Assembly (NCBI GenBank): GCA_025558095.1
Contig: JAIVFI010000006.1
Location: 124,001-188,000 of the forward strand
Length of the DNA stretch: 64,000 bases
Origin: Hyaloraphidium curvatum SAG 235-1
Lineage: Eukaryota; Fungi; Monoblepharomycota
Direction: 5' to 3'
Shown here: positions 4,905 through 63,031 of the stretch, piece after piece
Layout of the letters: each line of letters starts with the position of its first letter
How positions within the stretch are numbered: position 1 is the first letter of the stretch
Translations under genes and position numbers: made by a program
Notes under the pieces: generated by a model
What the model was told of the DNA's origin: nothing
Database searches by the model: none
The model's input: the letters and a program-made list of their open reading frames with translations, nothing else

Positions 4905-6353
4905 ATGGAGCGCCGCGACGAGCCCGCGCGCCCGCCCGGCCCTTTCGAGCCCACCGCGGCTGAGTGGAGCGCGCTGTTCCCGGCGCCGCCCGGTGCGCGC
5001 GACGAGTCGCGGCTGGAGCCGGGCGGGCCTTACCCGGCGCGCGACCCGCTGACGCGATCGGCGCTCTTCGCGGCCCTGCGCGGCCAGCGGCTGGCGGCGT
5101 TTGTCTCGCGCGGGCAGCTGCTGCTGGGCCCGGCCGCGGCGCACCAGGGCCGCAACGCGTCGGCACCGGCGCTGCTGAGCGTCGCGCTGCTCGGCCCGTT
5201 GTGGGTTTTCAACGGCGCCAGCACGCTGTTCCCGCGCGCGCAGCTCGCGGTCGCGACCGCCGTCAACGCCGCGTGGGTCGCGTTCGTGCTCGCCTCCAGC
5301 TGGGCCGCCGAGCTCGGCGTGAGGGGTCACACCTCGTCCAATCGCTCGGCGTTCATGGCCGCCGACATGTCGGCCACCCCGTACGCCGGCGTTGCGCGCT
5401 GGTGGGCCGTGGCCCCGCCGGGTGCGTCGGAGCTCACACGGCATACCCCCGGCGACCGCCTGTGCCCGTGCTGCGCGTGCGTGGGCGCTGTGCCGGACGG
5501 CGCCGCGGCAGAGGTCCTGGCGTGGACGGTGTTCAGCATGGCCCTGCTGAGCTTCCTCCAGACCGCCATGGTCTGGACCCCGATCGTCACGTTCGCGGCG
5601 CGGACGTGGTCGACGCCCTGGAGCGCCTTCCTCGCTGCCGCGTTCCTCGTCACGAAAGAGGCCTACCATCTGGTGCAGCACCTCCCCTACAATGCCCTGT
5701 CGCACCCACCCCTCGAGATCCCCAAGCGGCTGCGCCACCGCGCCGTGCTCCTCACCCTGCGCGATCTTGTCTCGCGCCTGGAGCTCGAAGCGGCCTCCGC
5801 AAAGGCGCAATCGTGCTGCTGCGCCGGCGACCCGCCGACCCCGATCTCCGCCGAGCCGTACGTGGCCCTCCACGCCGAGCTGCTGCGGTCTTGGGACGCC
5901 CAGATCCGCGGCGCCTTCCTCTCCCACGGCCTCCTCCTCACCTGGGGCCTCTTCACCGTCGTCCTGGGAGTCATATTTGCCTCGGCCGGCTCCTGCATCC
6001 CCGTCTGGATCCCGCTCTACCTCCTCGAGATCGTCCTCATCCTCCTCCGCAACCTCCTCCTCACGGCCGCCCTCAACTCGGGCGTCGCCAGCGTGCGCTC
6101 GCTCCTCTCGGACGCGTCCAAATCCCTCCTCCGGCTGCCCACACCCGCCGCGCGCCGCCACGCGGAGCTGCTCCGCGCCTACGCGGCCGACGATCCCCGC
6201 GGACGGTGGCTGGGCGTCCCGGTCGGGTACGGGTTCGCGCGCACCGCGGCCGCGTCGCTGTTCACCCTGGCGCTGGGGGCGTGGACCGTCGCGAGGGGTT
6301 TCGGCGTCGCCATCGTGCTGGAGAGCGCGTGCGGGGGGATGCCGGTCGGGTGA
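4905..6353 (+). CDS. 7-TM membrane protein, expanded family copy 1 (candidate GR-like/7TM ion channel)
   Basis: ATG 4905, intronless, about 7 hydrophobic segments. Shares EWxALxP, ARW, H-x6-CPCCAC, WTPIVT, RLRHRA, GSCIP and LGVPVGYG...SLFTLALGAW with four other loci in the window. Confidence 0.75.
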   Translation: MERRDEPARPPGPFEPTAAEWSALFPAPPGARDESRLEPGGPYPARDPLTRSALFAALRGQRLAAFVSRGQLLLGPAAAHQGRNASAPALLSVALLGPLWVFNGASTLFPRAQLAVATAVNAAWVAFVLASSWAAELGVRGHTSSNRSAFMAADMSATPYAGVARWWAVAPPGASELTRHTPGDRLCPCCACVGAVPDGAAAEVLAWTVFSMALLSFLQTAMVWTPIVTFAARTWSTPWSAFLAAAFLVTKEAYHLVQHLPYNALSHPPLEIPKRLRHRAVLLTLRDLVSRLELEAASAKAQSCCCAGDPPTPISAEPYVALHAELLRSWDAQIRGAFLSHGLLLTWGLFTVVLGVIFASAGSCIPVWIPLYLLEIVLILLRNLLLTAALNSGVASVRSLLSDASKSLLRLPTPAARRHAELLRAYAADDPRGRWLGVPVGYGFARTAAASLFTLALGAWTVARGFGVAIVLESACGGMPVG

Positions 6354-45279: not shown

Positions 45280-45607
45280 GGCGGGGGAGCGCTCACGCCG
45301 CGGCCGCTGGCATCGACCGCGCGGGCGGCGCGGATGCTCCCCAATAAAGCGCCCTCGCGCGGTCCCGCGGCGGCGGCGGCGGGGGAGGGCGCGGCACCCG
45401 CGTGTGATCTGCGCGTGATCGCTCGGAAAACGGTGGTGACTCTCGCGCGGGAGGTTAGCGCCTTCCCGTAACTGGACGGCCGCCTAAACGACTGATAGGG
45501 CGAAAACTCTGGGCCCGGCGTCCCACTCCGAATCGCGGATCTCTCTCTCCAGCCACGCCATGCAGAAACCGTGCCGCATTCTTTATTGTATATGTCATTC
45601 AAAGTGT

Positions 45608-46765
45608 TCAACTGTCGTTGGTCAACCTTTCCCATACCCATTCCGTGCTTCTGGAGAATCCAACGATCCCCATCCCGGCAGCGAGGACGAACTTCTTGCC
45701 GGCATCCAGGACGGCAAAGCGGGCCCGCCAGCCCTCGCTGAACTGGTCCTGGAGGCGGATTAGCACCGCCAGCTTGTCGTGGTAGGCATCCTGAGCATCC
45801 CGCGGATCCAGAGAATCGAGCAGATCAGCCACCGCAAGCTGCAGCGCCCGATGCTGCAGGCGGACCGTGACTTCGATCGCCTGTGGCACGTAGCAAGGCA
45901 CAGCGGTGACGACGTTGAAGGGGTAGTATAGCACGATCATGACGATGTAGAGGACCGCCGCGACGGCCCATGGCGAAGAGTAAATGGCTGGGGCAAGGGA
46001 AACGAGTGGCGTGTAGCCGAAGAAGAACCAGTTCAGAGCTCCAGTCACGGCAAGGAAGAGCAGGGAAATGACAGCGAAGCGGCTTGCAGAGCTCGCCAGC
46101 CCGCCCGCACACGATGCGAGGGTGCAGGGACATCGCAAATCCCCGGCCACGTGCTGGAGCAACACGCCGTCGCGGAGGCTTGCTTTGCCTTTGTGCGAGA
46201 CGTTCTCGACGTCGTCCCGGCCGGGTTCCGAGCTCCTGGCAGCGTCCAGCAGCTCACTCTAACGTGCAAATCCGGCAAATGCATTGCTGTCGCCCGCGAC
46301 GTTCAGTGGCCCGATTTCTTCCTTCGGCAGTCGCTTGTTTCTCAACGCGTTGCTGAGCAGCAAGGGCAGCAGCGCGATCCACTGTGCGACGAGACCGGCG
46401 ACTATGCGGGACGTTGTGAACTTTTCGCTGCCCAGATAAAAGACCGCGACCCAGCACGCGAGGGTGGCGAGGCCGACGAGCACGGTGCGAAATGAGAAGG
46501 AGGCGAGCGCGATGGGCAGAGCCGCAATCCGAAAAGTGGCCAGGCGGCGCAGGGGCGGCCACCTTTCCAACGCGCGCAAAAAGCGCGGCGTGTCGAGCGG
46601 GGAAGCCGCGCGCGCGTCGCCCGCGATGTCGCCGCCGGTCGGGTGCCGCGGCACGGGGAACCGCTCGGGCGGCGCAGCGGGGATGAGAGCGAGCCACGCC
46701 CGCGGCGAGTAATCGGCGCCGGTCGCCTTCTCCAAGGGCGCCAACGGGCCGGACTGCGAGGGCAT
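45608..46765 (-). pseudogene. 7-TM family copy 2, pseudogene
   Basis: The conserved FARW reads FAR* (TAG at 46259-46261). The frame continues with LLQHVAGDLRCPCTLASC, YTPLVS and RLQHRA, and lacks the last two TMs. Confidence 0.8.
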
Positions 46766-47186
46766 GTGGTTATCGGTCGGCATATGTAGCTTGTCCGAGG
46801 ACGCGATCGAGTAGTCCGACGCGACCCGCGCTCCTCTGACCACCAGCAGCGCATCGTGCACTTGCTCCAGGGCTGATGATATCTCGCCAATGCAGAAACG
46901 TACCTCATCTCCCCGTCAGCACCTGTTTCGGAGATGATGGAGCGCTGCCAAGGCAGGGACCGGCGGGAAACATGAGGGAGGCTGTGCTGGAACTCCCCTA
47001 GCTGACCTGGTTGGGCAGTTTCCGCTCAAGAAATTGTGCTACGACTCACTCTGTAGCTTTCTCTTCACTGACTACCCAACGACGACCTGACGCTGGTTGT
47101 CATTCTTTGTATCTCGGACGGTGCTGCCCGAGTGGCGATGGATCCGCACGGTCTGCCGCAACAAGTCAGCCATGAACAGTTCTTCA

Positions 47187-48707
47187 ATGTCGGAGGGCGA
47201 CGCACCCGCGGAGCCGCCCGCGCCGTTCAAGCTGCTGCCGGTGGAATGGGTCGCGCTGCTGCCGCACGCGGCGGGGCGCTCCAACGCTTCGGACCCCGCG
47301 GGTGCGCGTCGCGCTTCTGACCCCCTCACGTCGACACGACTGCTCGAGCTGCTACCCGACCCACTTCTCCGCGGAGTCGTGCGCTTCCAGCTGCTTGTTG
47401 CACGGCTGCGGCCGCCGCGCTCTATGGCCTTAGTGAGCCTGCTCCACATTTTCCTGTATTGCGCGACCACCGCGATTACGCCGGTCTTCAATGCCGGCTA
47501 CTTTGCTGTGCCCCAGCTGGCGGCTGGACTGGCCACCGTGTACCTTTTCCTCCTCGTCAACACGTTGGCACTCATCCCGAGCGTCGTCACTGCGGGGCGG
47601 CTGGGGATAGTGTCGTCGGACACCGCCGCCGGCGACAGTTGTCTCGGAGCGCCAGCCCGGTGGCAGGAACTGGTGCTCTACTCTGCGGTGCGCACCCAAA
47701 ATCCGGAGGCTGTGGAGGACAAAGGAGACACAGCCGCTTCGTCTCGGTCTTCTCTCATCATTCACAACGACAATGAAGGAGAACATTGCCCTTGCCCCTC
47801 CCCGGCCTGTTCGGGTGGCCTTGCACGCAAAGCCGCGGTCGTACGCCTCGCGCTTATGCCGCTGCTCGGCATCGTTGTGTTTGTGGCACTCGACATCATT
47901 GGACAATGGACTCCTATCGTGACTTTTGCCTCGATCACATGGACTACGGCATGGTCGACCATTGTCGTCGTTTTGCAGTTTCTCACCGCAATCCCGCAAA
48001 ACTACTTTATTGCGTTTGCTTTCGCATCCACCTCTTTCGGACTGGACCACGGCAGATTCACGGCCTTCACTCGGCGGTTGCGGCGCCGGGCAATGAAGCT
48101 CGCCCTCGATTCGATGCTGGACCGCCACGAACACGCCTTCATCCATGGACCGTCAAATTCGCCCATCACATCAACATTTCCGGGCCACGAGACGTACGCT
48201 GAGCTGCACACACAGCTCGCAATCCGCTGGCAAGAAGCTGCGCACCCCGATGCGCTTTTGGAGCTTACTATGTTCTACACCGTGTTGCCGGTCGTCTGCT
48301 CCGTCGTCAACATGATTGCCGGTAGCTGCATTCCCGCCATATACATCTCGAGCCTGGTCATTGTCCTCTTCATGGTTTCCGGGGCCCTCAGCACGGCTTC
48401 AGCGAGCAACGCCTCCATCTCGGACATCTGCGATCTTTACATTGCCGCGCAGCGCCGCGCGCGCGAACTTGCAGCCGCGTACCCGCAGCCGAGCGCCACA
48501 CTGCATTCCCTGCGCGCGCACGACGCGCTCCTGTCGAGCTGCATAACTGACGCCGACCGTGCGGGGGCCAAGGTATTGGGGTTCAGGATCGGCCGCGGCA
48601 CGATACGGGCTGCTATTGCGACTCTTCTGACAATTGCCGTGGGGTTGTGGGGAATCCTGCGCGGCCTTGGAATCCGGATTACGATGGATATTGCGTGCCC
48701 AAGATGA
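47187..48707 (+). CDS. 7-TM family copy 3 (tandem paralog A)
   Basis: Intronless, 7 hydrophobic segments. H-x7-CPCPSPAC, WTPIVT, RLRRRA, GSCIP, LGFRIGRGTIRAAIATLLTIAVGLWGILRG, IACPR*. Confidence 0.85.
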   Translation: MSEGDAPAEPPAPFKLLPVEWVALLPHAAGRSNASDPAGARRASDPLTSTRLLELLPDPLLRGVVRFQLLVARLRPPRSMALVSLLHIFLYCATTAITPVFNAGYFAVPQLAAGLATVYLFLLVNTLALIPSVVTAGRLGIVSSDTAAGDSCLGAPARWQELVLYSAVRTQNPEAVEDKGDTAASSRSSLIIHNDNEGEHCPCPSPACSGGLARKAAVVRLALMPLLGIVVFVALDIIGQWTPIVTFASITWTTAWSTIVVVLQFLTAIPQNYFIAFAFASTSFGLDHGRFTAFTRRLRRRAMKLALDSMLDRHEHAFIHGPSNSPITSTFPGHETYAELHTQLAIRWQEAAHPDALLELTMFYTVLPVVCSVVNMIAGSCIPAIYISSLVIVLFMVSGALSTASASNASISDICDLYIAAQRRARELAAAYPQPSATLHSLRAHDALLSSCITDADRAGAKVLGFRIGRGTIRAAIATLLTIAVGLWGILRGLGIRITMDIACPR

Positions 48708-49022
48708 CAGTTCGGTTTCATTCAAGTGTGGTGGTCTGATCGAGCGCCAAGCTAGCCCGTTGTAAGGTCGTCGCGGTCGAACATCGTGTAGAACCAGGCA
48801 CCGTTCGCGGCCGCAAGCGTGGCGGCCAAGAACCGCAGCGGATCGACCTCGAGGCCCCGAAGAAGCGACAGAATGATGGATGATTTCTCACAGATCATGC
48901 TCAGATACGTAGCTCGAGGTCCTATGCGATGCTTGTGAACCCTTCAAGTTCATCAACTGATGATGTCACCCACGGGTCGTCGCCCTTTGCAACCTCGACC
49001 ACTCGACCACGACACTATCGCA

Positions 49023-50537
49023 ATGTCGGAGGGCGACGCGCCGGCAGAGCCGCCCGCGCCGTTCAAGCTGCTGCCGGTGGAATGGGTCGCGCTGCTGCCG
49101 CACGCGGCGTCACGGTCGAACGCGTCGGACCCGGCAGCCGCGCGGCGCTCCGCGAACCCCCTCACGTCGGCGCGTCTCCTCGCGCTGCTACCCGACAGAC
49201 TCCTCCGCGGGGTCGTGCGCTTCCAGCTGCTCGCTGCGCAGCTGCGGCCGCCGCGCTCCATCCCCCTCGTGAACCTGCTCCACGTTGTCATGTTCGGTGC
49301 GGCGACCGCGATTGTGCCTGCCTTCAACGCCGGCTACTTTGCCGTGCCCCAGCTGGCCGCAGGTCTCGCTACCGTATACCTCTTCCTCCTCATCTTCGGG
49401 CTGGCAGGCGCGTCGACCGCCGTCACTGTGTGGCGGCTTGGGATCGTGTCGTCGGACCTAGCCGCCGGCGACAGCTGCCTTGGATCCCCGGCACGGTGGC
49501 AGGAGCTTGTGGTCTACTTTGAGGGGCGCACCCAGGACCCCGAGGCCGTAGAGGGCAAGGGCGACGTAGCGACTTCGTCTCCGCTCATCGCTCACGATGA
49601 CGCTGACGGAAAGCTCTGCCCGTGTTGTCTCCCCGCTTGTTCCGGTGGCCTTAGTCGCCAAGCCGCGGTCGTACGTTTGATTCTTTTGCCACTAACTGGC
49701 CTTGTTGTGTTCGTGGCATTCGATGTCATGGGGCAGTGGACTCCTATCGTGACCTTTGCCTCGACCACATGGACTACCGTCTGGTCAACAGTTGTGATCG
49801 TTTTGCAACTTGTCAGTGGAATCCCGCAAAACTTCATGTATGCTTTCGCCTTCGACTCCACCTCATTTGGCCTCGACCAGGGCAGATTCACCATTGTTAC
49901 CCGGCGGCTGCGGCGTCGGGCAATGAAGCTCGCTGTGGATTCGATGCTGGACCGCCACGCGCACGCCTTTGTTCACGGACCGTCGCAGTCGGCCAGCACG
50001 TCAGCCTTTCCCGACCACGAGACGTACGCGCAGCTGCACGCGCAACTTGCAATCCGCTGGCAAGAAGCTGCGCACACCGACGTGCTTCTTGAAATGACTT
50101 CGATGTTTACCGCGTTGCCGGTCGTCTGCTCCGTCGTCAACATGATCGTCGGTGGCTGCATCCCCGTCATCTACGTCACGAGCCTGGTCTTTGTCCTCCT
50201 CATGGTTTCGGGGGCCCTCAGCGCGGCCTCGGCAAGCAATGCCTCTATTTCGGACATCAGCGAGCTATATGTCGCCGCCCGGCACCGCGCGCGCGAACTC
50301 GCCGCCGCGCATCCGCAGCCGAGCGCCGCTCTGCACTCTCTGCACGCGCACGACGCGCTTCTGTCGAGCTGCATCGTCGAGGCCGAGAACGCGGGCGCAA
50401 AAGTCTTGGGGTTCAGGATCGGCCGCGGAACGATCCGTGCCGCCATTGCAACTCTCCTGACAATCGCCGTGGGCTTGTGGGGCATACTGCGTGGCCTCGG
50501 GATCCGAATCTCGTTGGACATTGCGTGCCCGAGGTGA
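49023..50537 (+). CDS. 7-TM family copy 4 (tandem paralog B)
   Basis: Colinear with 47187-48707, with an identical N-terminus MSEGDAPAEPPAPFKLLPVEWVALLPHAA and an identical last helix. Confidence 0.85.
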   Translation: MSEGDAPAEPPAPFKLLPVEWVALLPHAASRSNASDPAAARRSANPLTSARLLALLPDRLLRGVVRFQLLAAQLRPPRSIPLVNLLHVVMFGAATAIVPAFNAGYFAVPQLAAGLATVYLFLLIFGLAGASTAVTVWRLGIVSSDLAAGDSCLGSPARWQELVVYFEGRTQDPEAVEGKGDVATSSPLIAHDDADGKLCPCCLPACSGGLSRQAAVVRLILLPLTGLVVFVAFDVMGQWTPIVTFASTTWTTVWSTVVIVLQLVSGIPQNFMYAFAFDSTSFGLDQGRFTIVTRRLRRRAMKLAVDSMLDRHAHAFVHGPSQSASTSAFPDHETYAQLHAQLAIRWQEAAHTDVLLEMTSMFTALPVVCSVVNMIVGGCIPVIYVTSLVFVLLMVSGALSAASASNASISDISELYVAARHRARELAAAHPQPSAALHSLHAHDALLSSCIVEAENAGAKVLGFRIGRGTIRAAIATLLTIAVGLWGILRGLGIRISLDIACPR

Positions 50538-53725: not shown

Positions 53726-53835
53726 CATAATAATGTAATCGACATGGATCGAGTGGATGTGTGCCAAGAACGGACGGCGGAGGCGATGTGCTGACGGCGC
53801 CGCTCAGGGTCCGGCAAGGATCGAGCTCGTGCACC

Positions 53836-55975
53836 ATGGACGCGACTCCGGCCGGCGGCGACGCGTCTCTGCCGTCGGATTCGCAAGTCGAGACTCTTGT
53901 TGACGCGCCGGACGGCGATGCGGGGCCGGCGGAGTCGTACGGGGGCACCCGCACCGCGGACCTCACCGCGGAGGTGGCGCGCCTCGTCGCCGAGCAGGTC
54001 GCCGAGGCGTTTGCCGAGCGCGGCGACCGCGACGCGGAGGAGCCGCCGGAAGTGCCCGCGGAGTTGGCGGCGCGCGTCGTCGCCTCCGCCGGCGACGCCG
54101 CCGTCTTCGTCTGCCTGTGCGCGATGGGCCGCTTCGCGTCGAGCTCGGCGCCGCGGGCGGACGACAAGGAGGAAGCCATGCTCGGACACGACGATCTGCA
54201 GTGGTCGCGCTCGCTCTACTGCGAGCTGCTCGCGATCGCCGTGCTGAACGCCCTGCTCGAGGAGCGCGGCATCTCCCACGTCATGACGCACGTCCTCGCC
54301 GCCGTCTACCCCAACAGCGAGCCCGTGGACATGCCCGAGGGTGCGGGCCTTGCGGCTTCGCTCGTCAACAGGCTGGAGCGGATCGGCGAGGACTCGGGCC
54401 CGGAATCGGCCCTGGAGCAGGGGCTCGAGTGCGGCGCCCGCCAGTTCATCGAGCACAAGGTCGTCGCCATGACCGTCGACGCCATCTGGAACGGCACGAT
54501 CGTCTATACCGAGAACCAGAGCAGCGATCCCGAGGTCACGGTGCCCAAGCACATCGCAGACCCGGGCCACGCGGACGTCGGCTTCGGCGCGCTCTTCCGC
54601 GGCATCGGCCGCCTGCGCGTGCCGGCCAACCAGGTCCTCGTGAACCAGGCCATGTTCCTCGTCTTTCTGGTCATCTACTCGGTCCTTATCAACAACCGGC
54701 ACCAGAACCCGACGCCGCTCGAGTACGCCTTTTTCGTCTTCGGGATCAGCTACACCTTTGGCGAGCTCGCCCAGGTCGGCAAGCTCGGCATCCGGCTGTA
54801 CCTCACCGACAGCTGGAACACCGTCGACATCCTGCTGTGGACGAGCTTCACCGCCGCCCTCGTCATCCGGATCTACACCCTGGCCGAGTTCCCGCCCGCG
54901 CCCGGCATCTTTGGCATCCAGCCCGCGAGGGAGGACCTCGAGATTGATTTCAAGAAGCGCGGAAGGTCGGCCTGGGTCGAGCGCTACTACGACATTCTCT
55001 CCCTCATGGCGGTGCCGCTCTGGCTGCGGATCCTCGCCGTCTTCAACGAGTGCGTCGACCGGCGCTCCCTCCTCCTCTCACCCGCACTGACCCTCCCTTG
55101 TCGCCCCGCAGGAACGAGTTCGTCGCGACGACCATCATCACCGTGCAGCGCCTCATGCGGGACTCGCTCATGTTCCTCATCCTCCTCGTGCCCGTCACCG
55201 TCGGCTTCGCGCAGGGCATGCTCGGCCTGGAGCCCAACCGGGAGGCGTTGGACGGCGCCGGGTTCACGGGGACGTTCCTTTGGCTGCTGCGCGGGTTCAT
55301 CGGCGACCTCGGTGGGCCTCGGTCCTTGTTTGCGCCGTCGGTTCGGCGCTGATTCGGTCGGCAGACTTTGACTCGGCCGCGGATTTCGACCCCTTCTGGG
55401 GCCCGCTCTTCTACGGCGCCTACATCCTCCTCGGCTACATCATCCTGCTCAACCTCCTCGTCGCCATCTTCTGCGAGAGCTTCTCCGGTGCGTCCAACCG
55501 TGCGCCCCACCGTTCCCGTGCTCAGACCCGCCGCGCAGAGATCGTCTCGGCCTCCGGGTACCAGTTCCACGCGCAGCGCACCGTCGCCACCCTGCAGCTC
55601 TCGGACCGGCGCCGCTCGTACCCCTTCCCCGTCCCGCTCAACGTGCCCGGCTGGCTGCTGACCGCCCCCGCGCGGCTCTGCCTTCCCGCGGGGACCGCGG
55701 CGGGGTGGGTCGCCGCGGTCTGGTGGGCGCTGTGCATGCCGCTGCACGTTGCGGTGGCGGCGTGGGAGGAGGGGAGGTACTGGATCCGCGGGCTTTTCGT
55801 CGGTCCGGGGGCGGGCGGCGGGGGGAAGCGGGCGGCCGCGGGGGAGGACAAGGCGCAGGCGCCGCCGGCGGAGGAGGGGAAGGAGGCCGCGGGCGGGTTC
55901 GCTGGGTTGGTGGCGGAGCTGCTGGAGGCCAAGGTGGGATCGGACGGCGGGGAGGTCGCGGAAGGGGAGATCTAA
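53836..55975 (+). CDS. Fungal TRP cation channel, Yvc1/TRPY1-like
   Basis: CELLAI, SALE...ARQFI...VDAIWNGTI, RLRVP, LYLTDSWNTVD, LLNLLVAIF, PFPVPLN. Six TMs, three introns. Confidence 0.82.
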
Positions 55976-59366: not shown

Positions 59367-59594
59367 GGTGGGGCTGGGTCTGGAGGTGCAGGCGGAGGGC
59401 GGAATGGGTGGTTGGGGCGCTGGTGTTTCGGACGACGTCACCACGGTTAACGGAATCTCTAAATCCTCCTGCGTGCCCCGCCCCATTCATCTGTCTCTCT
59501 CTCGCTGATGTATTGGATGAGACTTGATGTCCTCAATCTTGTTGCGAAGGATCAGTCCGCTCGCGGGGATCGCGCGGCGTCTCATAGCAAATGG

Positions 59595-61304
59595 ATGCGC
59601 TTCCGCTGCTCTGAACGCGCGCTCACGCGCCGCCTCCTCCGTCGTTTCCTCATCGGCTGCGCGTTCGCCGCCTTTGCCGCCTATTTCGCCGCGCCGCCCC
59701 GCACCGGCGAGCACAATGTGCGCGCGTACGGGGCAAGGGGCGATGGAACTTCCCTGGACACCGCGGCGATACAGCGGGCCATCGACGCCGCCTTTTCCGC
59801 GGGCGGCGGCACGGTGATCCTGCCCGCCGGCGACTACCTTTCCTTTTCGCTGCGCCTGCGGAGCCGCGTGGGCCTCCGCTTCGAGCACGGCGCGATCCTG
59901 CGCGCTGCCACCCCCGGGAAGCACGCGGGCAGCTACGATGCGCCCGAGCCGAACCCCTGGGACGCGTACCAGGATTTTGGACACAGCCATTGGCGCAACA
60001 GCCTGATCTGGGGCGAAAGCGTCGAGCACGTCTCCATCTCCGGCCCGGGCCGGATTCTGGGAGACGGCCTCGTGCGCCGCGGCCCCGGCCCTCGCCGCGC
60101 AGAGCGCCCAGGCGACACGCCGGGCACGCTGAAGGACGCCGCCGACGCCTCCCGCGCCGTGGACCCCGAGGGCAGGGGCCTCGCCCGGGGGAACGGCACC
60201 GCCTGGAGCGACGAGTTCGACGGCATGGTCGGCGAGGGGAACAAGGCCATCGCGCTCAAACTGTCCCGCCACGTCGCCGTGCGCGATCTCACCATCGTCA
60301 ACGGCGGCCACTTTGCTGTGCTCGCCACCGGCGTGGACCGCCTCGTGATCGAGAACGTCAAAGTCGACACCATGCGCGACGGCTTCGACATCGACTCGTG
60401 CCGGCACGTCCGCATCTCCAACTGCGTCATCAACACCCCCAACGACGACGCCATCGTCCTCAAGAGCTCCTTCGCCCTCGGCTACGCCCGAGCCACCGAG
60501 CACGTCTCCATCGCCGGCTGTCGGGTCAGTGGGTTCGACCCCGGCACCCTCCTGGACGGCACCCGCGGCCGCACACAGAAGCTCGCGCCCGACCGCGACG
60601 GTCCCACCGGCCGGATCAAGCTCGGCACCGAGTCCAACGGCGGCTTCCGCGACGTCTCCATCAACAACTGCGTCTTCGAGCGGAGCCGCGGCATCGCCCT
60701 CGAGACCGTGGACGGCGGCCCGCTCGAAAACGTGCGCATCTCGGACATCGTCATGCGCGACGTGACCACCGCCCCCATCTTCCTCCGCGTCGGCGCGCGC
60801 ATGCGCGGCCCGGAAGGCGCCCGCGTCTCCGGCATGCGCGGCATCCTCCTGACAAACATCACCGCCTACAACGCCGAGCCCCGCTATTCATCCATCATCG
60901 CCGGCCTGCCCGATCACCCCATCAATGGCGTCGAGCTGAGCGGCATCCGCGTGGTCTCGGCCGGCGGTGGCACCCGCGAGCAGGCCGCCCGAGTGCTCGC
61001 TGAGAACGAGCAGGGGTACCCAGAGCCCTCCATGTTCGGCGTCACCCCGAGCCACGGGCTCTACATCCGCCACGCACGGGGGTTTGTGGTCCGGAACGCC
61101 AGCTTCCGCACGCTGGAGCCCGACGCGCGCCCAGCGGTCGTTGTCGAGCGGGCGGACGGCGTGCTTTTCGACGGGGCCTCGGGCGCGCGGCGCCCGGGCC
61201 AAGGCGCGGACTTTGTTGCCAAGAGCGTGCGGGGCCTGGTCGTGCGCAACCGACCGGGTCACCCCGATCGAAAGGTTACAAACGCGGAGCGGGAGGAGTT
61301 TTGA
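59595..61304 (+). CDS. Glycoside hydrolase family 28 (bacterial-type polygalacturonase/rhamnogalacturonidase-like), intronless
   Basis: NVRAYGARGDG, AIQRAIDAA, YQDFGHSHWRNSLIWGE, RDGFDIDSC, PNDDAIVLKS, GRIKLGTESNGGF, YPEPSMFG. Confidence 0.9.
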   Translation: MRFRCSERALTRRLLRRFLIGCAFAAFAAYFAAPPRTGEHNVRAYGARGDGTSLDTAAIQRAIDAAFSAGGGTVILPAGDYLSFSLRLRSRVGLRFEHGAILRAATPGKHAGSYDAPEPNPWDAYQDFGHSHWRNSLIWGESVEHVSISGPGRILGDGLVRRGPGPRRAERPGDTPGTLKDAADASRAVDPEGRGLARGNGTAWSDEFDGMVGEGNKAIALKLSRHVAVRDLTIVNGGHFAVLATGVDRLVIENVKVDTMRDGFDIDSCRHVRISNCVINTPNDDAIVLKSSFALGYARATEHVSIAGCRVSGFDPGTLLDGTRGRTQKLAPDRDGPTGRIKLGTESNGGFRDVSINNCVFERSRGIALETVDGGPLENVRISDIVMRDVTTAPIFLRVGARMRGPEGARVSGMRGILLTNITAYNAEPRYSSIIAGLPDHPINGVELSGIRVVSAGGGTREQAARVLAENEQGYPEPSMFGVTPSHGLYIRHARGFVVRNASFRTLEPDARPAVVVERADGVLFDGASGARRPGQGADFVAKSVRGLVVRNRPGHPDRKVTNAEREEF

Positions 61305-61500: not shown

Positions 61501-63031
61501 ATGACCTCTCCGCCGCCCACGAATCGCGCCCCGCCGGATTTCTCGCAGCAAGAATGGCTTGCCTTGTTCCCCTGGCCGGCCAAGGACCCCGGGGTCGGCC
61601 TCCCGGCGGAGGACGACGAAGACGCGCTCCCCGACGCGTCGGAGCCCCCACGCGAGGCGGAACCGCTGGACGCGCACACCCTCGCCGCCGCGCTGGCGCC
61701 GTGGCCGCACTTGCGGGGGCTGGCGCGGCTGCAGCGGTCGAGTGCAGTGCAGTCGGCCGTGCACGCCAAGCTGTGGCGAGCGCTCCGGCTGCTCGCCTTC
61801 GCGGCGGCCTCGTGCGCCCTGCTCTCCTTCGTCCCTTCGGCCTCGGGAGGACAGTTCGGCACAAAGCAGACCGCCGCCTTTGGCGCCGCGTTCGTTGGCC
61901 TACTTTTGGCCTTGAACGTTGCAGTCTTCCGAAAAGTGCCGTGGACAGAGATGGCATGGAGCTATGACGCGGATCCCCTCGCGGGCTTCGTCCGCTGGTG
62001 CGAGCTCGTTGAGGCCGACCGAGCCATGGGCAAGGACGGCGCGGCGGGCTCGGTTCTGCTGCGGCACTGGGACTCGGACGAAAAGTGTCCCTGCGCGACC
62101 TGCCTGGCCGATCTCGGCCATTCTATTCTGCGGCAATTCACGTGGATTATTGCGCTGCGCTTCGTGGTGGGCGGCTTTGCTACCTGGTTGCTGGCGTTCT
62201 GGACGCCGCTCGTGACCCTGGGGAGCGCTGTCTGGAGCAGCCCTTGGGCCGTTGCCGGGCTCGTTCTCGTAGTCCACATCGTCACCTTTTATCCACTGAA
62301 TGCATTCGCCCGGAACACGCGGTGCTCGGGGGCCATGACGCCCACCCTCCGGCTCCTCCGCCGGGCCGTCGCCGCGAACCTGATGTCCGTGCTGGACGCC
62401 TGCCGGGGTACTCCGGGCGCGGATGGAGACTACAGTCGGCATGTTGACTTGATGATCCAGCTCCGGCGTCGGCTCGCCGCTGCAGCGACCGTGAGGCTGT
62501 CCGCATTGGAGGATATGTCCCGGATTTGGCTGGTAACGAGCTTGAGCTACGTCGTTTCCATGATAATCGTCGCCGTAAGTGCTTGTCTTCCCCCGCGCGC
62601 CGTCCGCACTTCTGATGTGCCCGCAGGCTGTCGGTTCGTGCATCACCGCCGGAAGCATCTCCACCTTTGGCTTCCTCTTTTGCGTCTCCTGCTTCGACAT
62701 ATACCTCTCCGCGTACGCCAACGGCCTGGCTTCGGACGCCGGCAAGCTCTACGACGCCGCCCTCGTGCGCCTGCGGGAACGCCGCGCCCGCGATCCCGAG
62801 GGCCAGGCCATCGACCACGCGCACGAGCAGCGCATCGTGCGCGTCGAAGGCCTGCTGCGATCGTACCGGGACGTCGCGGGCCTGCAGGCGACCTTCTTTG
62901 GGTTCCCGATCACCTTCCGCGTCGTGCGGACGCTCCTCGTGACGACCTTCACCGTGGCGATCGGTCTCTGGAGCCTGCTGCGGAGCGCGGGGCTGACGTT
63001 CACAATCGAGAGCATATGTCCTTCTTGGTGA
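61501..63031 (+). CDS. 7-TM family copy 5 (one intron)
   Basis: EWLALFP, GFVRW, LLRHWDSDEKCPCATC, WTPLVT, RLLRRA. Intron 62575-62626 precedes AVGSCI; ends FFGFPITFRVVRTLLVTTFTVAIGLWSLLR...ESICPSW*. Confidence 0.82.

What the first reader, a model, noticed from the sequence alone, without database searches (positions are those of the whole stretch)
45608..50537. Expanded, unannotated 7-TM family resembling gustatory-receptor-like/7TM ion channels: candidate fungal chemoreceptor repertoire
Seen: five homologs in 64 kb (4905-6353, 45608-46765, 47187-48707, 49023-50537, 61501-63031). The intact copies have seven hydrophobic segments, short TM1-2, TM3-4 and TM5-6 loops, long TM2-3 and TM4-5 loops, and TM6 running into an amphipathic helix (SNASISDICDLY...RARELA). 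The best-conserved part is the last helix, (L/F)G(F/V)x(I/V)xxxxxRxxxxTLxTxAxGxW. Known: insect Gr/Or, plant DUF3537 and GR-like proteins of unicellular eukaryotes, including chytrids, have this loop pattern and a most-conserved split TM7 preceded by G-F-x-hydrophobic. Inference: these are ligand-gated 7TM channels. The mix of tandem, dispersed and dead copies is the birth-and-death pattern typical of chemoreceptor families.
Basis: partly seen in the sequence, partly recalled or inferred. Interest (0 to 1): 0.88.

Follow-up and report, generated by a model that had tools for sequence, protein, structure and literature searches.

The report
Huge odorant-receptor-like channel family in fungus
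The early-branching fungus Hyaloraphidium curvatum carries roughly 450 genes (five in this window) for seven-helix membrane proteins whose predicted shape is that of insect smell and taste receptor channels. That would be by far the largest such repertoire seen outside animals.

Summary
The window holds five members of one family: three intact single-exon genes, one intact gene with a 52-nt intron, and one pseudogene.

The genome is Hyaloraphidium curvatum (Monoblepharomycota). A family motif occurs 312 times against 2 for the control, which implies about 450 copies. A profile search found 474 protein clusters, and all named ones sampled were H. curvatum 'hypothetical proteins'.

No sequence method links the family to anything known (Pfam, PDB hmmsearch, 7tm_7 and DUF3537 models).

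Structure does. Two AlphaFold2 models (pLDDT 90 and 92) each have the same eight insect OR/GR/Orco chains as the top eight of 48,161 PDB representatives (Z 8.9-12.8, 300-347 residues aligned). All 7TMIC hallmarks are present:
- seven TMs with a predicted N-in/C-out topology;
- long TM4-6;
- a split TM7a/7b;
- TM7b as the best-conserved part.

A four-copy model packs through TM6 extension and TM7a (score 0.55, best control 0.00). The tandem pair is under purifying selection (dN/dS 0.24; TM7b 0.02).

Channel and chemoreceptor function remain inferred. I found no published description. Other first-stage notes flagged the same family elsewhere in this genome.

The parts
4905..6353 (+). Copy A: intact single-exon family gene of 482 aa.
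   Evidence: Covers the whole family HMM (1-495, E 8e-136). AF2 model pLDDT 92.0, pTM 0.90. The top 8 of 48,161 PDB representatives are insect OR/GR/Orco, Z 8.9-12.8.
45608..46765 (-). Copy D: pseudogene, head-to-head with the tandem pair.
   Evidence: Only HMM positions 11-356 are present, in two pieces. A TAG at 46259-46261 sits where the conserved Trp (W159) belongs. No TM5-TM7 coding sequence lies downstream in any frame. It is only about 30-37% identical to any paralog, so it is an old lineage.
47187..48707 (+). Copy B: intact single-exon gene of 506 aa. It is the reference for residue numbering.
   Evidence: Full HMM match, E 4e-141. AF2 model pLDDT 89.6, pTM 0.89. Structure matches.
47763..47810 (+). 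Invariant His/Cys motif (H193, C201, C203, C208) at the end of the long TM2-TM3 loop. The loop is predicted to be cytoplasmic, and the motif is a candidate metal site.
   Evidence: Invariant in 60 of 60 paralogs and nearly invariant in 112. Local pLDDT is 96-97. Metal binding is inferred and was not tested.
48402..48563 (+). TM6 cytoplasmic extension plus TM7a (residues 406-459). This is the predicted 'anchor domain' that makes the subunit contacts.
   Evidence: Helices 384-431 and 437-459 in the AF2 model. Confident contacts in the four-copy model lie at residues 419-435 of one subunit and 437-458 of the next.
48594..48665 (+). TM7b (residues 470-493): the most conserved helix and the candidate pore-lining helix.
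   Evidence: Mean conservation 0.65 against 0.28-0.38 for TM1-6. R474 is invariant and T482 is present in 58 of 60. dN/dS is 0.02 in the tandem pair.
49023..50537 (+). Copy C: intact single-exon gene of 504 aa, a tandem duplicate of B.
   Evidence: Full HMM match, E 2e-138. It is 78% identical to B. dS 0.59, dN 0.14, dN/dS 0.24.
61501..62574 (+). Copy E, exon 1 (358 codons; N-terminus to TM5).
   Evidence: HMM 11-370. Aligns to paralog P0145 residues 16-369.
62575..62626 (+). Copy E intron: 52 nt, GTAAGT...CTGAT...CAG, phase 0.
   Evidence: Sequence read. The two exon translations resume the family motif (A-V-G-S-C-I) exactly after the intron. They align to P0145 without a gap at 369|370.
62627..63031 (+). 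Copy E, exon 2 (TM5-6 loop to the C-terminus, with stop codon).
   Evidence: HMM 361-495, E 4e-37. It is 62% identical to P0145 residues 370-502.

Best explanation
These loci belong to a family of about 450 genes, restricted to the Hyaloraphidium lineage, that encode 470-540-aa seven-transmembrane proteins. Their fold is that of the 7TMIC superfamily: insect odorant and gustatory receptors, animal GRLs and plant DUF3537.

Proposed mechanism:
- Each protein inserts with its N-terminus in the cytoplasm and its C-terminus outside.
- TM1-6 form a variable bundle that, in insect receptors, holds the ligand pocket.
- The cytoplasmic extensions of TM4-6 plus TM7a form an anchor domain through which four subunits assemble.
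- The highly conserved TM7b lines a central cation pore that opens on ligand binding.

Features specific to this family:
- a 64-73-residue cytoplasmic TM2-TM3 loop ending in an invariant H-x6/7-C-x-C-x4-C motif, a possible Zn or regulatory site;
- an invariant extracellular Cys pair, one in the TM5-6 loop and one in the C-terminal tail.

Shown: the family exists, its size, its coding constraint, its predicted fold and its predicted topology.

Inferred: tetramer formation (model only), pore, ligand gating and sensory role.

I put about 0.9 on the 7TMIC fold and about 0.45 on ligand-gated channel or chemoreceptor function.
For: Family and organism.
- 60 and 112 full-length paralogs align end to end with invariant H193, C201, C203, C208, C381, N408, G465, R474 and C504.
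- 312 motif matches in the genome against 2 for the control. Motif sensitivity is 103 of 149, which gives about 450 copies.
- 474 clusters at E<=1e-3 and 306 at E<=1e-30.
- 19 of 20 sampled representatives are H. curvatum 'hypothetical proteins'; the 20th is a metagenome cluster.

Fold.
- AF2 models reach pLDDT 89.6 / pTM 0.89 and pLDDT 92.0 / pTM 0.90.
- An exhaustive VIA-align search of 48,161 PDB representatives puts eight OR/GR/Orco chains at ranks 1-8 for both models. For copy B: Z 9.9-12.8, 300-344 residues aligned, rmsd 5.3-6.2. For copy A: Z 8.9-12.8. The next rows have Z <= 8.9 and at most 264 residues aligned.
- A second look over Foldseek's best 1000 chains ranks 20 OR/GR/Orco entries first (Z 9.9-13.9, including 6c70 Orco at Z 11.0 with 332 aligned). 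It then drops to Z 8.4.
- Foldseek's top hits are Gr43a, BmGr9 and Gr64a (prob 0.98-1.0, E 0.05-0.06).
- The ESM Atlas shape search returns a cnidarian cluster (TM 0.56/0.69), 7tm_7, GUR-4 and DUF3537 clusters. The feature search also lists DUF3537.
- From background knowledge, the AF2 weights predate the first 7TMIC structure (6c70, released 2018-08-22). The fold is therefore not recalled from training.

Hallmarks as defined in PMC9998090.
- Seven TMs.
- K+R density of 0.09-0.15 in the N-terminus, IL1, IL2 and IL3, against 0.01-0.04 in EL1-3 and the C-terminal tail. This indicates N-in/C-out.
- Long TM4, TM5 and TM6 helices (255-320, 336-379, 384-431).
- TM7 split into 437-459 and 470-493 by a short hairpin.
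- TM7b is the most conserved helix.

Assembly.
- The four-copy model of residues 258-506 scores 0.55, with the best of 3 controls at 0.00.
- In the tool's calibration, that mark was reached by 21 of 30 proteins solved as pairs of one chain and by 0 of 23 solved as single chains.
- The runs agree in at least 73% of contacts, and the partner's pLDDT is at least 60.
- The interface is TM6 extension against the neighbour's TM7a.

Selection. The tandem pair has dN/dS 0.24 overall, 0.02 in TM7b and the C-terminus, and 0.51-0.58 in TM1-2 and TM5-6.
Against: - No sequence-level link exists to any 7TMIC. Pfam finds nothing for 60 members. The 7tm_7 and DUF3537 HMMs find nothing in the genome. A profile search of PDB sequences finds no OR or GR.
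- The animal GR TM7 motif is absent in 0 of 126.
- Foldseek E-values are weak (0.05-0.3) and its TM-scores are 0.3-0.44. Z values of 12-14 lie in the range the tool warns can arise for helical bundles.
- The long TM2-3 loop differs from insect receptors.
- The tetramer score comes from ESMFold2 without an alignment, at pLDDT about 61. It lies outside the tool's calibration, which used two copies, and it may reflect memory of solved OR/GR tetramers.
- No non-animal 7TMIC has a demonstrated channel function (PMC9998090).
- H. curvatum is non-flagellated (PMC8371127), so chemotaxis is not an obvious use.
- Expression is not shown. The one run that holds the region is only guessed to be RNA.
Confidence: 0.6

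Rival explanations
1. The proteins have the 7TMIC fold and may be true distant homologues, but they are not chemoreceptors. They could be constitutive or otherwise gated channels, or scaffolding membrane proteins of internal membranes. The expansion would then serve another purpose, for example cell-surface variation, self/non-self recognition or defence.
For: - The function of every non-animal 7TMIC is unknown, and PHTF-type members are not known receptors (PMC9998090; bioRxiv 10.1101/2023.08.30.555482).
- The family has a long IL1, which is a Class-B-like trait.
- It has a strictly conserved cytoplasmic His/Cys motif that no insect receptor has.
- The organism is non-motile.
Against: The variation pattern is that of receptor repertoires.
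- About 450 very divergent paralogs, with median pairwise identity 27%.
- Variable TM1-6 with a conserved TM7b and anchor domain.
- Tandem arrays plus a pseudogene.
Confidence: 0.3
2. The family is an unrelated, lineage-specific helical membrane protein family. Its resemblance to OR/GR structures would be convergent, or a generic helical-bundle match, and it would work as something else such as a transporter.
For: - Sequence searches give no link.
- Z of 12-14 and TM-scores of 0.3-0.44 are modest.
- The tool notes that helical models can reach Z 13-14 against unrelated chains.
Against: - For two models, the eight OR/GR/Orco representatives fill ranks 1-8 among 48,161 chains. Alignments cover 85-95% of the targets from TM1 to TM7b, while unrelated rows align at most 264 residues.
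- The specific hallmarks are all present: N-in topology, long TM4-6, split TM7, most-conserved TM7b.
- No transporter or GPCR scores with any confidence.
Confidence: 0.08
3. The ORFs are not real genes. They would be chance open frames in a 65% GC genome, or a repeat or transposon-borne sequence.
For: - GC-rich DNA gives many long spurious ORFs.
- The copy number is very high.
Against: - Protein-level conservation holds across paralogs only 25-30% identical, with invariant residues.
- dN/dS is 0.24 at dS 0.59.
- The structure models are confident.
- The flanks of the tandem pair are unrelated.
- The genes are annotated models in GenBank.
- Relatives occur in a 54% GC environmental eukaryote.
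Confidence: 0.02

Closest known systems
Insect odorant receptors, Orco and gustatory receptors (solved examples: 6c70 Orco, 7lic MhOR5, 8v00 AaegOR10, 8jm9 Gr43a, 8vc1 BmGr9)
   Same: - Predicted helix packing over about 300-350 residues (Z up to 13.9).
- Seven TMs, N-in/C-out.
- Long TM4-6 forming an anchor domain, and a split TM7a/7b.
- TM7b is the best-conserved part.
- Predicted tetramer contacts lie in the anchor region.
- A large, highly divergent, tandem-and-dispersed gene family with pseudogenes.
   Different: - Sequence identity is only 6-12% (VIA-align; Foldseek alignments up to 13%), with no HMM match to 7tm_6 or 7tm_7.
- The (T/S)Y-x5-(Q/K/E)(F/L/M) TM7 motif is absent.
- IL1 is long (64-73 aa) and carries an invariant His/Cys3 motif.
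- There is an invariant EL3/C-tail Cys pair and an N-terminal cytoplasmic region of about 75 aa.
- The host is a non-motile unicellular fungus without neurons.
Chytrid GRLs (SpunGRL1 and SpalGRL1 of Spizellomyces; Benton et al. 2020, PMC7746228)
   Same: Fungal (chytridiomyceta) proteins with 7TMIC topology and a poorly conserved TM7 motif.
   Different: - Those are single-copy genes that profile methods can link to GRL/DUF3537. This family has about 450 copies and no detectable sequence link.
Plant DUF3537 proteins (PF12056)
   Same: - A non-animal 7TMIC family whose TM7 motif is unrecognisable.
- Structural match in the ESM Atlas (TM 0.43/0.60 over residues 177-494), and listed by the feature search.
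   Different: - The PF12056 HMM does not match.
- Plants have 4-12 copies (PMC7746228).
- DUF3537 has a long IL3 rather than a long IL1.
Class-B (PHTF-like) eukaryotic 7TMICs (Himmel et al. 2023, bioRxiv 10.1101/2023.08.30.555482)
   Same: Stereotyped 7TMIC features plus a long intracellular TM2-TM3 loop.
   Different: - No PHTF-like protein appeared among the structural or feature neighbours. The nearest clusters are Class-A types (7tm_7, GUR, DUF3537).
- Class assignment was not resolved here.

Membership tests
7TMIC superfamily (structure-defined; criteria of Benton & Himmel 2023, PMC9998090) | Seven TM helices with an intracellular N-terminus | tested here: met
   Seven hydrophobic segments and seven membrane helices in the AF2 models. 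K+R density is 0.09-0.15 in the N-terminus, IL1, IL2 and IL3, against 0.01-0.04 in EL1-3 and the C-tail, over 60 paralogs. The topology is predicted, not measured.
7TMIC superfamily | Characteristic TM packing, superposable on Orco, ORs and GRs | tested here: met
   Ranks 1-8 of 48,161 PDB representatives are OR/GR/Orco for two paralog models (Z 8.9-12.8, 300-347 aligned). 6c70_A gives Z 11.0 with 332 aligned.
7TMIC superfamily | Long TM4, TM5 and TM6 projecting into the cytoplasm (anchor domain) | tested here: met
   Model helices 255-282 plus 288-320, 336-351 plus 355-379, and 384-431. In copy A they are 238-266 plus 271-301, 318-362 and 368-409.
7TMIC superfamily | TM7 split into a cytoplasmic TM7a and a membrane TM7b | tested here: met
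   Helices 437-459 and 470-493 are separated by a short two-strand hairpin. The same arrangement occurs in copy A, at 414-428 and 442-465.
7TMIC superfamily | Tetrameric assembly through the anchor domain around a TM7b pore | tested here: inconclusive
   The four-copy model scores 0.55 against a best control of 0.00. Its contacts are TM6 extension (419-435) against TM7a (437-458). This is a prediction only, outside the tool's calibration, and possibly from memory. No confident TM7b contacts were listed.
7TMIC superfamily | Ligand-gated cation channel activity | not testable with these tools
   This needs electrophysiology or imaging of expressed protein.
Animal GR/GRL family (Pfam 7tm_7, PF08395) | Match to the family HMM | tested here: not met
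   No Pfam hit for the 4 window proteins at E<=10 or for the 60 members at E<=1. PF08395 finds nothing in the whole genome at E<=10, but that search's controls also rang nowhere.
Animal GR/GRL family (Pfam 7tm_7, PF08395) | TM7 motif (T/S)Y-h5-(Q/K/E)(F/L/M) (PMC7746228) | tested here: not met
   0 of 126 full-length members carry it in the last 60 residues, even with Y/F allowed.
Plant DUF3537 (PF12056) | Match to the family HMM | tested here: not met
   Only structural and feature-level resemblance was seen.
Class-B PHTF-like 7TMIC | [quoted passage not shown] | tested here: inconclusive
   IL1 averages 64 residues (73 in copy B). That is longer than in insect receptors. No PHTF-like neighbour was recovered.
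GPCR (rhodopsin-like and other 7TM receptors) | N-out/C-in topology and the GPCR helix bundle | tested here: not met
   The charge bias indicates N-in. No GPCR appears among the listed structural matches.

The most novel reading that the evidence does not exclude
Hyaloraphidium has independently built a repertoire of about 450 tetrameric, ligand-gated 7TMIC channels. This would be a true chemosensory or environment-sensing receptor family in a fungus, comparable in size to or larger than insect OR+GR repertoires. It would carry a family-specific cytoplasmic His/Cys3 (metal or redox) regulatory module. Large odorant-receptor-type repertoires would then not be an animal invention, and a culturable microbe would be available for studying how such channels are tuned.
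Probability: 0.35. Interest if true: 0.92.

Novelty: new variant of a known kind. Interest (0 to 1): 0.8.

Why it matters
7TMICs outside animals are known only as single genes or small families: 1 in Spizellomyces, up to 6 in protists and 4-12 in plants (PMC7746228). None of them has a known function.

A family of roughly 450 divergent, selectively constrained members in a 32-Mb fungal genome is about one gene per 70 kb. It would be the largest non-animal 7TMIC repertoire. It would also be the first case of receptor-like birth-and-death expansion of this fold outside Metazoa.

This makes two open questions directly testable in a culturable microbe:
- whether non-animal 7TMICs are ligand-gated channels;
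- what they sense.

It also offers hundreds of natural sequence variants for structure-function work. Finally, it shows that sequence-based annotation misses an entire large family, since every member is labelled 'hypothetical protein'.

Tried and rejected
- Word-indexed protein searches with copy B and with the 60-member profile returned only the query itself.
- A profile search against PDB sequences gave one irrelevant hit at E 0.023.
- Pfam scans of 4 and then 60 members gave nothing. PF08395 and PF12056 found nothing in the genome.
- Metagenome scans gave nothing further. The A2 profile was too variable to search with. A3 and P0151 found no new relatives.
- I first read copy E as frameshifted. 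I rejected that in favour of a 52-nt intron.
- Copy D as a recent inverted duplicate of the tandem pair is rejected. It is at most 37% identical to any paralog.
- A transposon or repeat origin is rejected, because the paralogs are 25-30% identical and their flanks are unrelated.
- GPCR and transporter folds are rejected.
- Expression could not be settled. The single run holding the region is only guessed to be RNA. Its contigs cover the four family loci but not the 46530-47210 spacer, which fits a transcriptome but does not prove one.
- The first motif spacing I tried (H-x7-C) fitted only copy B's subgroup. The family consensus is H-x3-D-x2-C-P-C.
Full report
**What is in the window**

The window is 64 kb at about 65% GC. 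It corresponds to contig 6, positions 124001-188000, of a 31.9-Mb, 55-contig assembly.

I built a family HMM from 60 paralogs and scanned all six frames.
- Copy A, 4905-6353 (+): intact, 482 aa.
- Copy B, 47187-48707 (+): intact, 506 aa.
- Copy C, 49023-50537 (+): intact, 504 aa.
- Copy D, 45608-46765 (-): only HMM positions 11-356.
- Copy E, 61501-63031 (+): matches in two reading frames.

B and C are tandem duplicates, 78% identical. A and E are about 29-33% identical to them.

Copy D is a pseudogene. TAG at 46259-46261 replaces the conserved Trp of the A-R-W motif, and nothing encoding TM5-7 follows in any frame. It is at most 37% identical to any paralog, so it is an old lineage rather than a dead copy of B or C.

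Copy E is not broken. A 52-nt intron (GTAAGT...CTGAT...CAG, phase 0) lies at 62575-62626. Translated separately, exon 1 ends in TM5 and exon 2 starts with the family's A-x-G-S-C-I loop motif. The two pieces align to paralog P0145 at residues 16-369 and 370-502 with no gap.

The neighbouring genes are unrelated: a protein kinase, a TRPY1/YVC1-like channel and a GH28 hydrolase.

**Organism and family size**

I sampled 20 family representatives. Nineteen are GenBank 'hypothetical protein DFJ74DRAFT_...' entries from Hyaloraphidium curvatum, on contigs whose lengths match this assembly. H. curvatum belongs to Monoblepharomycota, in the chytridiomyceta clade. It is an atypical non-flagellated fungus first described as a colourless alga (PMC8371127).

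Several counts agree on the size of the family.
- The genome search scored 89 matches out of 747 first-look candidates. Nearly all were single open frames covering the whole model.
- From 70 fetched loci I recovered 57 further full-length ORFs of 470-543 aa.
- A profile search of 1.84 billion representatives found 474 proteins at E<=1e-3, 426 at E<=1e-10 and 306 at E<=1e-30.
- The back-translated motif H-x3-D-x2-C-P-C occurs 312 times in the genome, against 2 for the reversed control. It is present in 103 of 149 known members. That implies about 450 copies, or about one per 70 kb.

Copies lie on most contigs, on both strands and in local arrays. One example is six motif hits within 33 kb on contig 1.

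The family is old and diverse. Median pairwise identity is 27%, and median nearest-neighbour identity is 38% among representatives.

The only relatives outside H. curvatum are fragments on environmental eukaryotic contigs. P0144/P0151 lie on a 54% GC contig and are 53% identical to the closest H. curvatum member. P0155 is a second such fragment.

**Are they real, constrained genes?**

Yes.
- Across 60 paralogs, H193, C201, C203, C208, C381, N408, G465, R474 and C504 are invariant.
- The tandem pair has dS 0.59, dN 0.14 and dN/dS 0.24.
- By region, dN/dS is 0.02 in TM7b and the C-terminus, 0.15-0.20 in the cytoplasmic parts and 0.51-0.58 in TM1-2 and TM5-6.

**Sequence-level identity**

None was found.
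- Pfam gives no hit for the window proteins or for 60 members.
- A profile search of PDB sequences finds no receptor.
- The 7tm_7 and DUF3537 HMMs find nothing in the genome.
- The animal GR TM7 motif is absent in 0 of 126 members.

**Structure**

AlphaFold2 with the 60-paralog alignment gives a confident model of copy B (pLDDT 89.6, pTM 0.89). With 112 sequences, copy A, which is 28% identical to B, gives pLDDT 92.0 and pTM 0.90.

The structure searches agree with each other.
- An exhaustive structural alignment against 48,161 PDB representatives places the same eight chains at ranks 1-8 for both models. They are AaegOR10, ApisOR5, MhOR5, AgamOR28, BmGr9, Gr43a, Orco and Gr64a.
- For copy B these give Z 9.9-12.8, 300-344 residues aligned and rmsd 5.3-6.2. 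For copy A they give Z 8.9-12.8 and 303-347 aligned.
- Below them, Z falls to 8.9 or less, with at most 264 residues aligned. Those rows are mostly cytoplasmic helical bundles matching the anchor region.
- Re-aligning Foldseek's best 1000 chains puts 20 OR/GR/Orco entries first (Z 9.9-13.9; Orco 6c70 at Z 11.0 with 332 aligned). The next hit is a syntaxin at Z 8.4.
- Foldseek itself ranks Gr43a, BmGr9 and Gr64a first, with probability 0.98-1.0 but weak E-values of 0.05-0.06.
- The ESM Atlas shape search returns a cnidarian cluster (TM 0.56/0.69) and clusters carrying 7tm_7, GUR-4 and DUF3537. The language-model feature search also lists DUF3537.
- From background knowledge, the AF2 weights were trained before any 7TMIC structure was released (6c70 came out in August 2018). 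The model is therefore not a recollection.

**Hallmarks**

Benton & Himmel (PMC9998090) define 7TMICs by four features: seven TMs with an intracellular N-terminus, characteristic packing, long TM4-6 forming the anchor domain, and TM7 split into 7a and 7b. All four are present here.
- TM1 is 77-95, TM2 is 108-138, TM3 is 212-246 and TM4 is 255-282, continuing as helix 288-320.
- TM5 is 336/355-379.
- TM6 is a single 48-residue helix, 384-431.
- TM7a is 437-459, followed by a short hairpin, and TM7b is 470-493.
- Lys+Arg density over 60 paralogs is 0.09-0.15 per residue in the N-terminus, IL1, IL2, TM6 extension and IL3. It is 0.01-0.04 in EL1, EL2, EL3 and the C-tail. This is the N-in/C-out orientation, opposite to GPCRs.
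- TM7b is the most conserved helix, at 0.65 against 0.28-0.38 for the others.

**Assembly**

I modelled four copies of residues 258-506.
- The score was 0.55, and the best of 3 controls was 0.00.
- In the tool's calibration, the mark was reached by 21 of 30 proteins solved as pairs of one chain and by 0 of 23 solved as single chains.
- The runs agree in at least 73% of contacts, and the partner's pLDDT is at least 60.
- On eukaryotes the mark was reached by 17 of 29 and 0 of 30. The tool warns that a pass may come from memory of solved complexes and that four copies lie outside its calibration.
- The confident contacts join the TM6 extension (419-435) of one subunit to TM7a (437-458) of the next, in a ring. 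In ORs the anchor domain makes most inter-subunit contacts in the same region (PMC9998090).

This supports a tetramer but does not show one.

**Family-specific features**

- The TM2-TM3 loop is long, at 64 residues on average. It ends in the invariant H-x6/7-C-x-C-x4-C motif, modelled at pLDDT 96-97.
- With N-in topology this loop is cytoplasmic. A metal (Zn) or redox-sensing site is a reasonable inference, but I did not test it.
- A long IL1 is described for Class-B (PHTF-like) 7TMICs (bioRxiv 10.1101/2023.08.30.555482). All structural neighbours found here are Class-A types, so the class is unresolved.
- The invariant C381 (TM5-6 loop) and C504 (C-tail) are both predicted to be extracellular. 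They sit on paired short strands in the model, which would fit a disulfide.

**Interpretation**

These are 7TMIC-type proteins, and the family shows the tandem, dispersed and dead-copy pattern.

The proposed function is a tetrameric ligand-gated cation channel with a variable pocket and a conserved pore. It rests on analogy, on the tetramer model and on the selection pattern. I rate it at about 0.45. The main rival, at about 0.3, is that the fold serves a non-chemosensory role. Convergence or a generic bundle match (about 0.08) and artefact (about 0.02) are unlikely.

**Novelty**

Published fungal 7TMICs are a single GRL in each of two Spizellomyces species (PMC7746228), plus unspecified chytrid and blastoclad entries in Himmel et al.. 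Full-text searches found no paper linking Hyaloraphidium or monoblepharids with gustatory receptors or 7TMICs.

Other first-stage notes of this scan flagged the same family on other pieces of this genome. They also flagged the Cys motifs and the pseudogene in this window.

I class the finding as a new variant of a known kind. The fold is known. New here are a sequence family with no detectable link to known ones, extra conserved modules, and an expansion without precedent outside animals.

**Limits**

- Expression is unproven. The one public run holding the region is only guessed to be RNA. Its contigs cover copies D, B and C and the downstream gene, but not the 46530-47210 spacer.
- I could not compare the family with chytrid GRL or PHTF sequences, or search other eukaryotic genomes.
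- Only the best 150 of the 474 hits could be seen.

Noticed in passing
window 53761-55371 (+): An ORF matches the TRPY1 N-terminal linker domain, PKD_channel, Ion_trans and YVC1_C. It is probably a TRPY1/YVC1-like cation channel gene, possibly with introns.
   Followed up: no
window 59508-61304 (+): A GH28 / pectate-lyase-like beta-helix ORF lies directly upstream of family copy E. Another first-stage note calls it a bacterial-type GH28.
   Followed up: no
window 47148-47210 and 48984-49046: The 5' ends of tandem copies B and C share a 63-nt stretch. This made the public run's assembler join 49046 back to 47211 in one contig. It may mean gene conversion or a shared 5' UTR and start region, since the sequence further upstream is unrelated.
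   Followed up: partly
window 45551-46529: A contig of the public run (depth 85) covers most of pseudogene D and ends in an Illumina adapter. If the run is RNA, the pseudogene is transcribed.
   Followed up: no
G000:C10:808980-809009 (+) and 813188-813217 (-): Two family motif sites have identical 30-mers on opposite strands, 4.2 kb apart. This suggests a very recent inverted duplication of a family member.
   Followed up: no
G000:C1:704002-736677 and G000:C5:784007-816948: Dense arrays of family members, each with six motif hits within about 33 kb on mixed strands. These are good material for tests of recent selection.
   Followed up: no
L071 (JGI metagenome 3300043314, contig Ga0480381_0040092), 237-1208: A family member lies on a 54% GC environmental contig next to an SNF2-like gene. 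It is 53% identical to the closest H. curvatum paralog. An uncultured relative of different base composition therefore shares the family. A second such fragment (P0155) lies beside split cytochrome P450 exons.
   Followed up: partly
window 62575-62626: Most family genes are single-exon in a genome that has introns. Copy E carries a 52-nt intron just before the TM5-6 loop, and its closest paralog P0145 is collinear across that point.
   Followed up: partly
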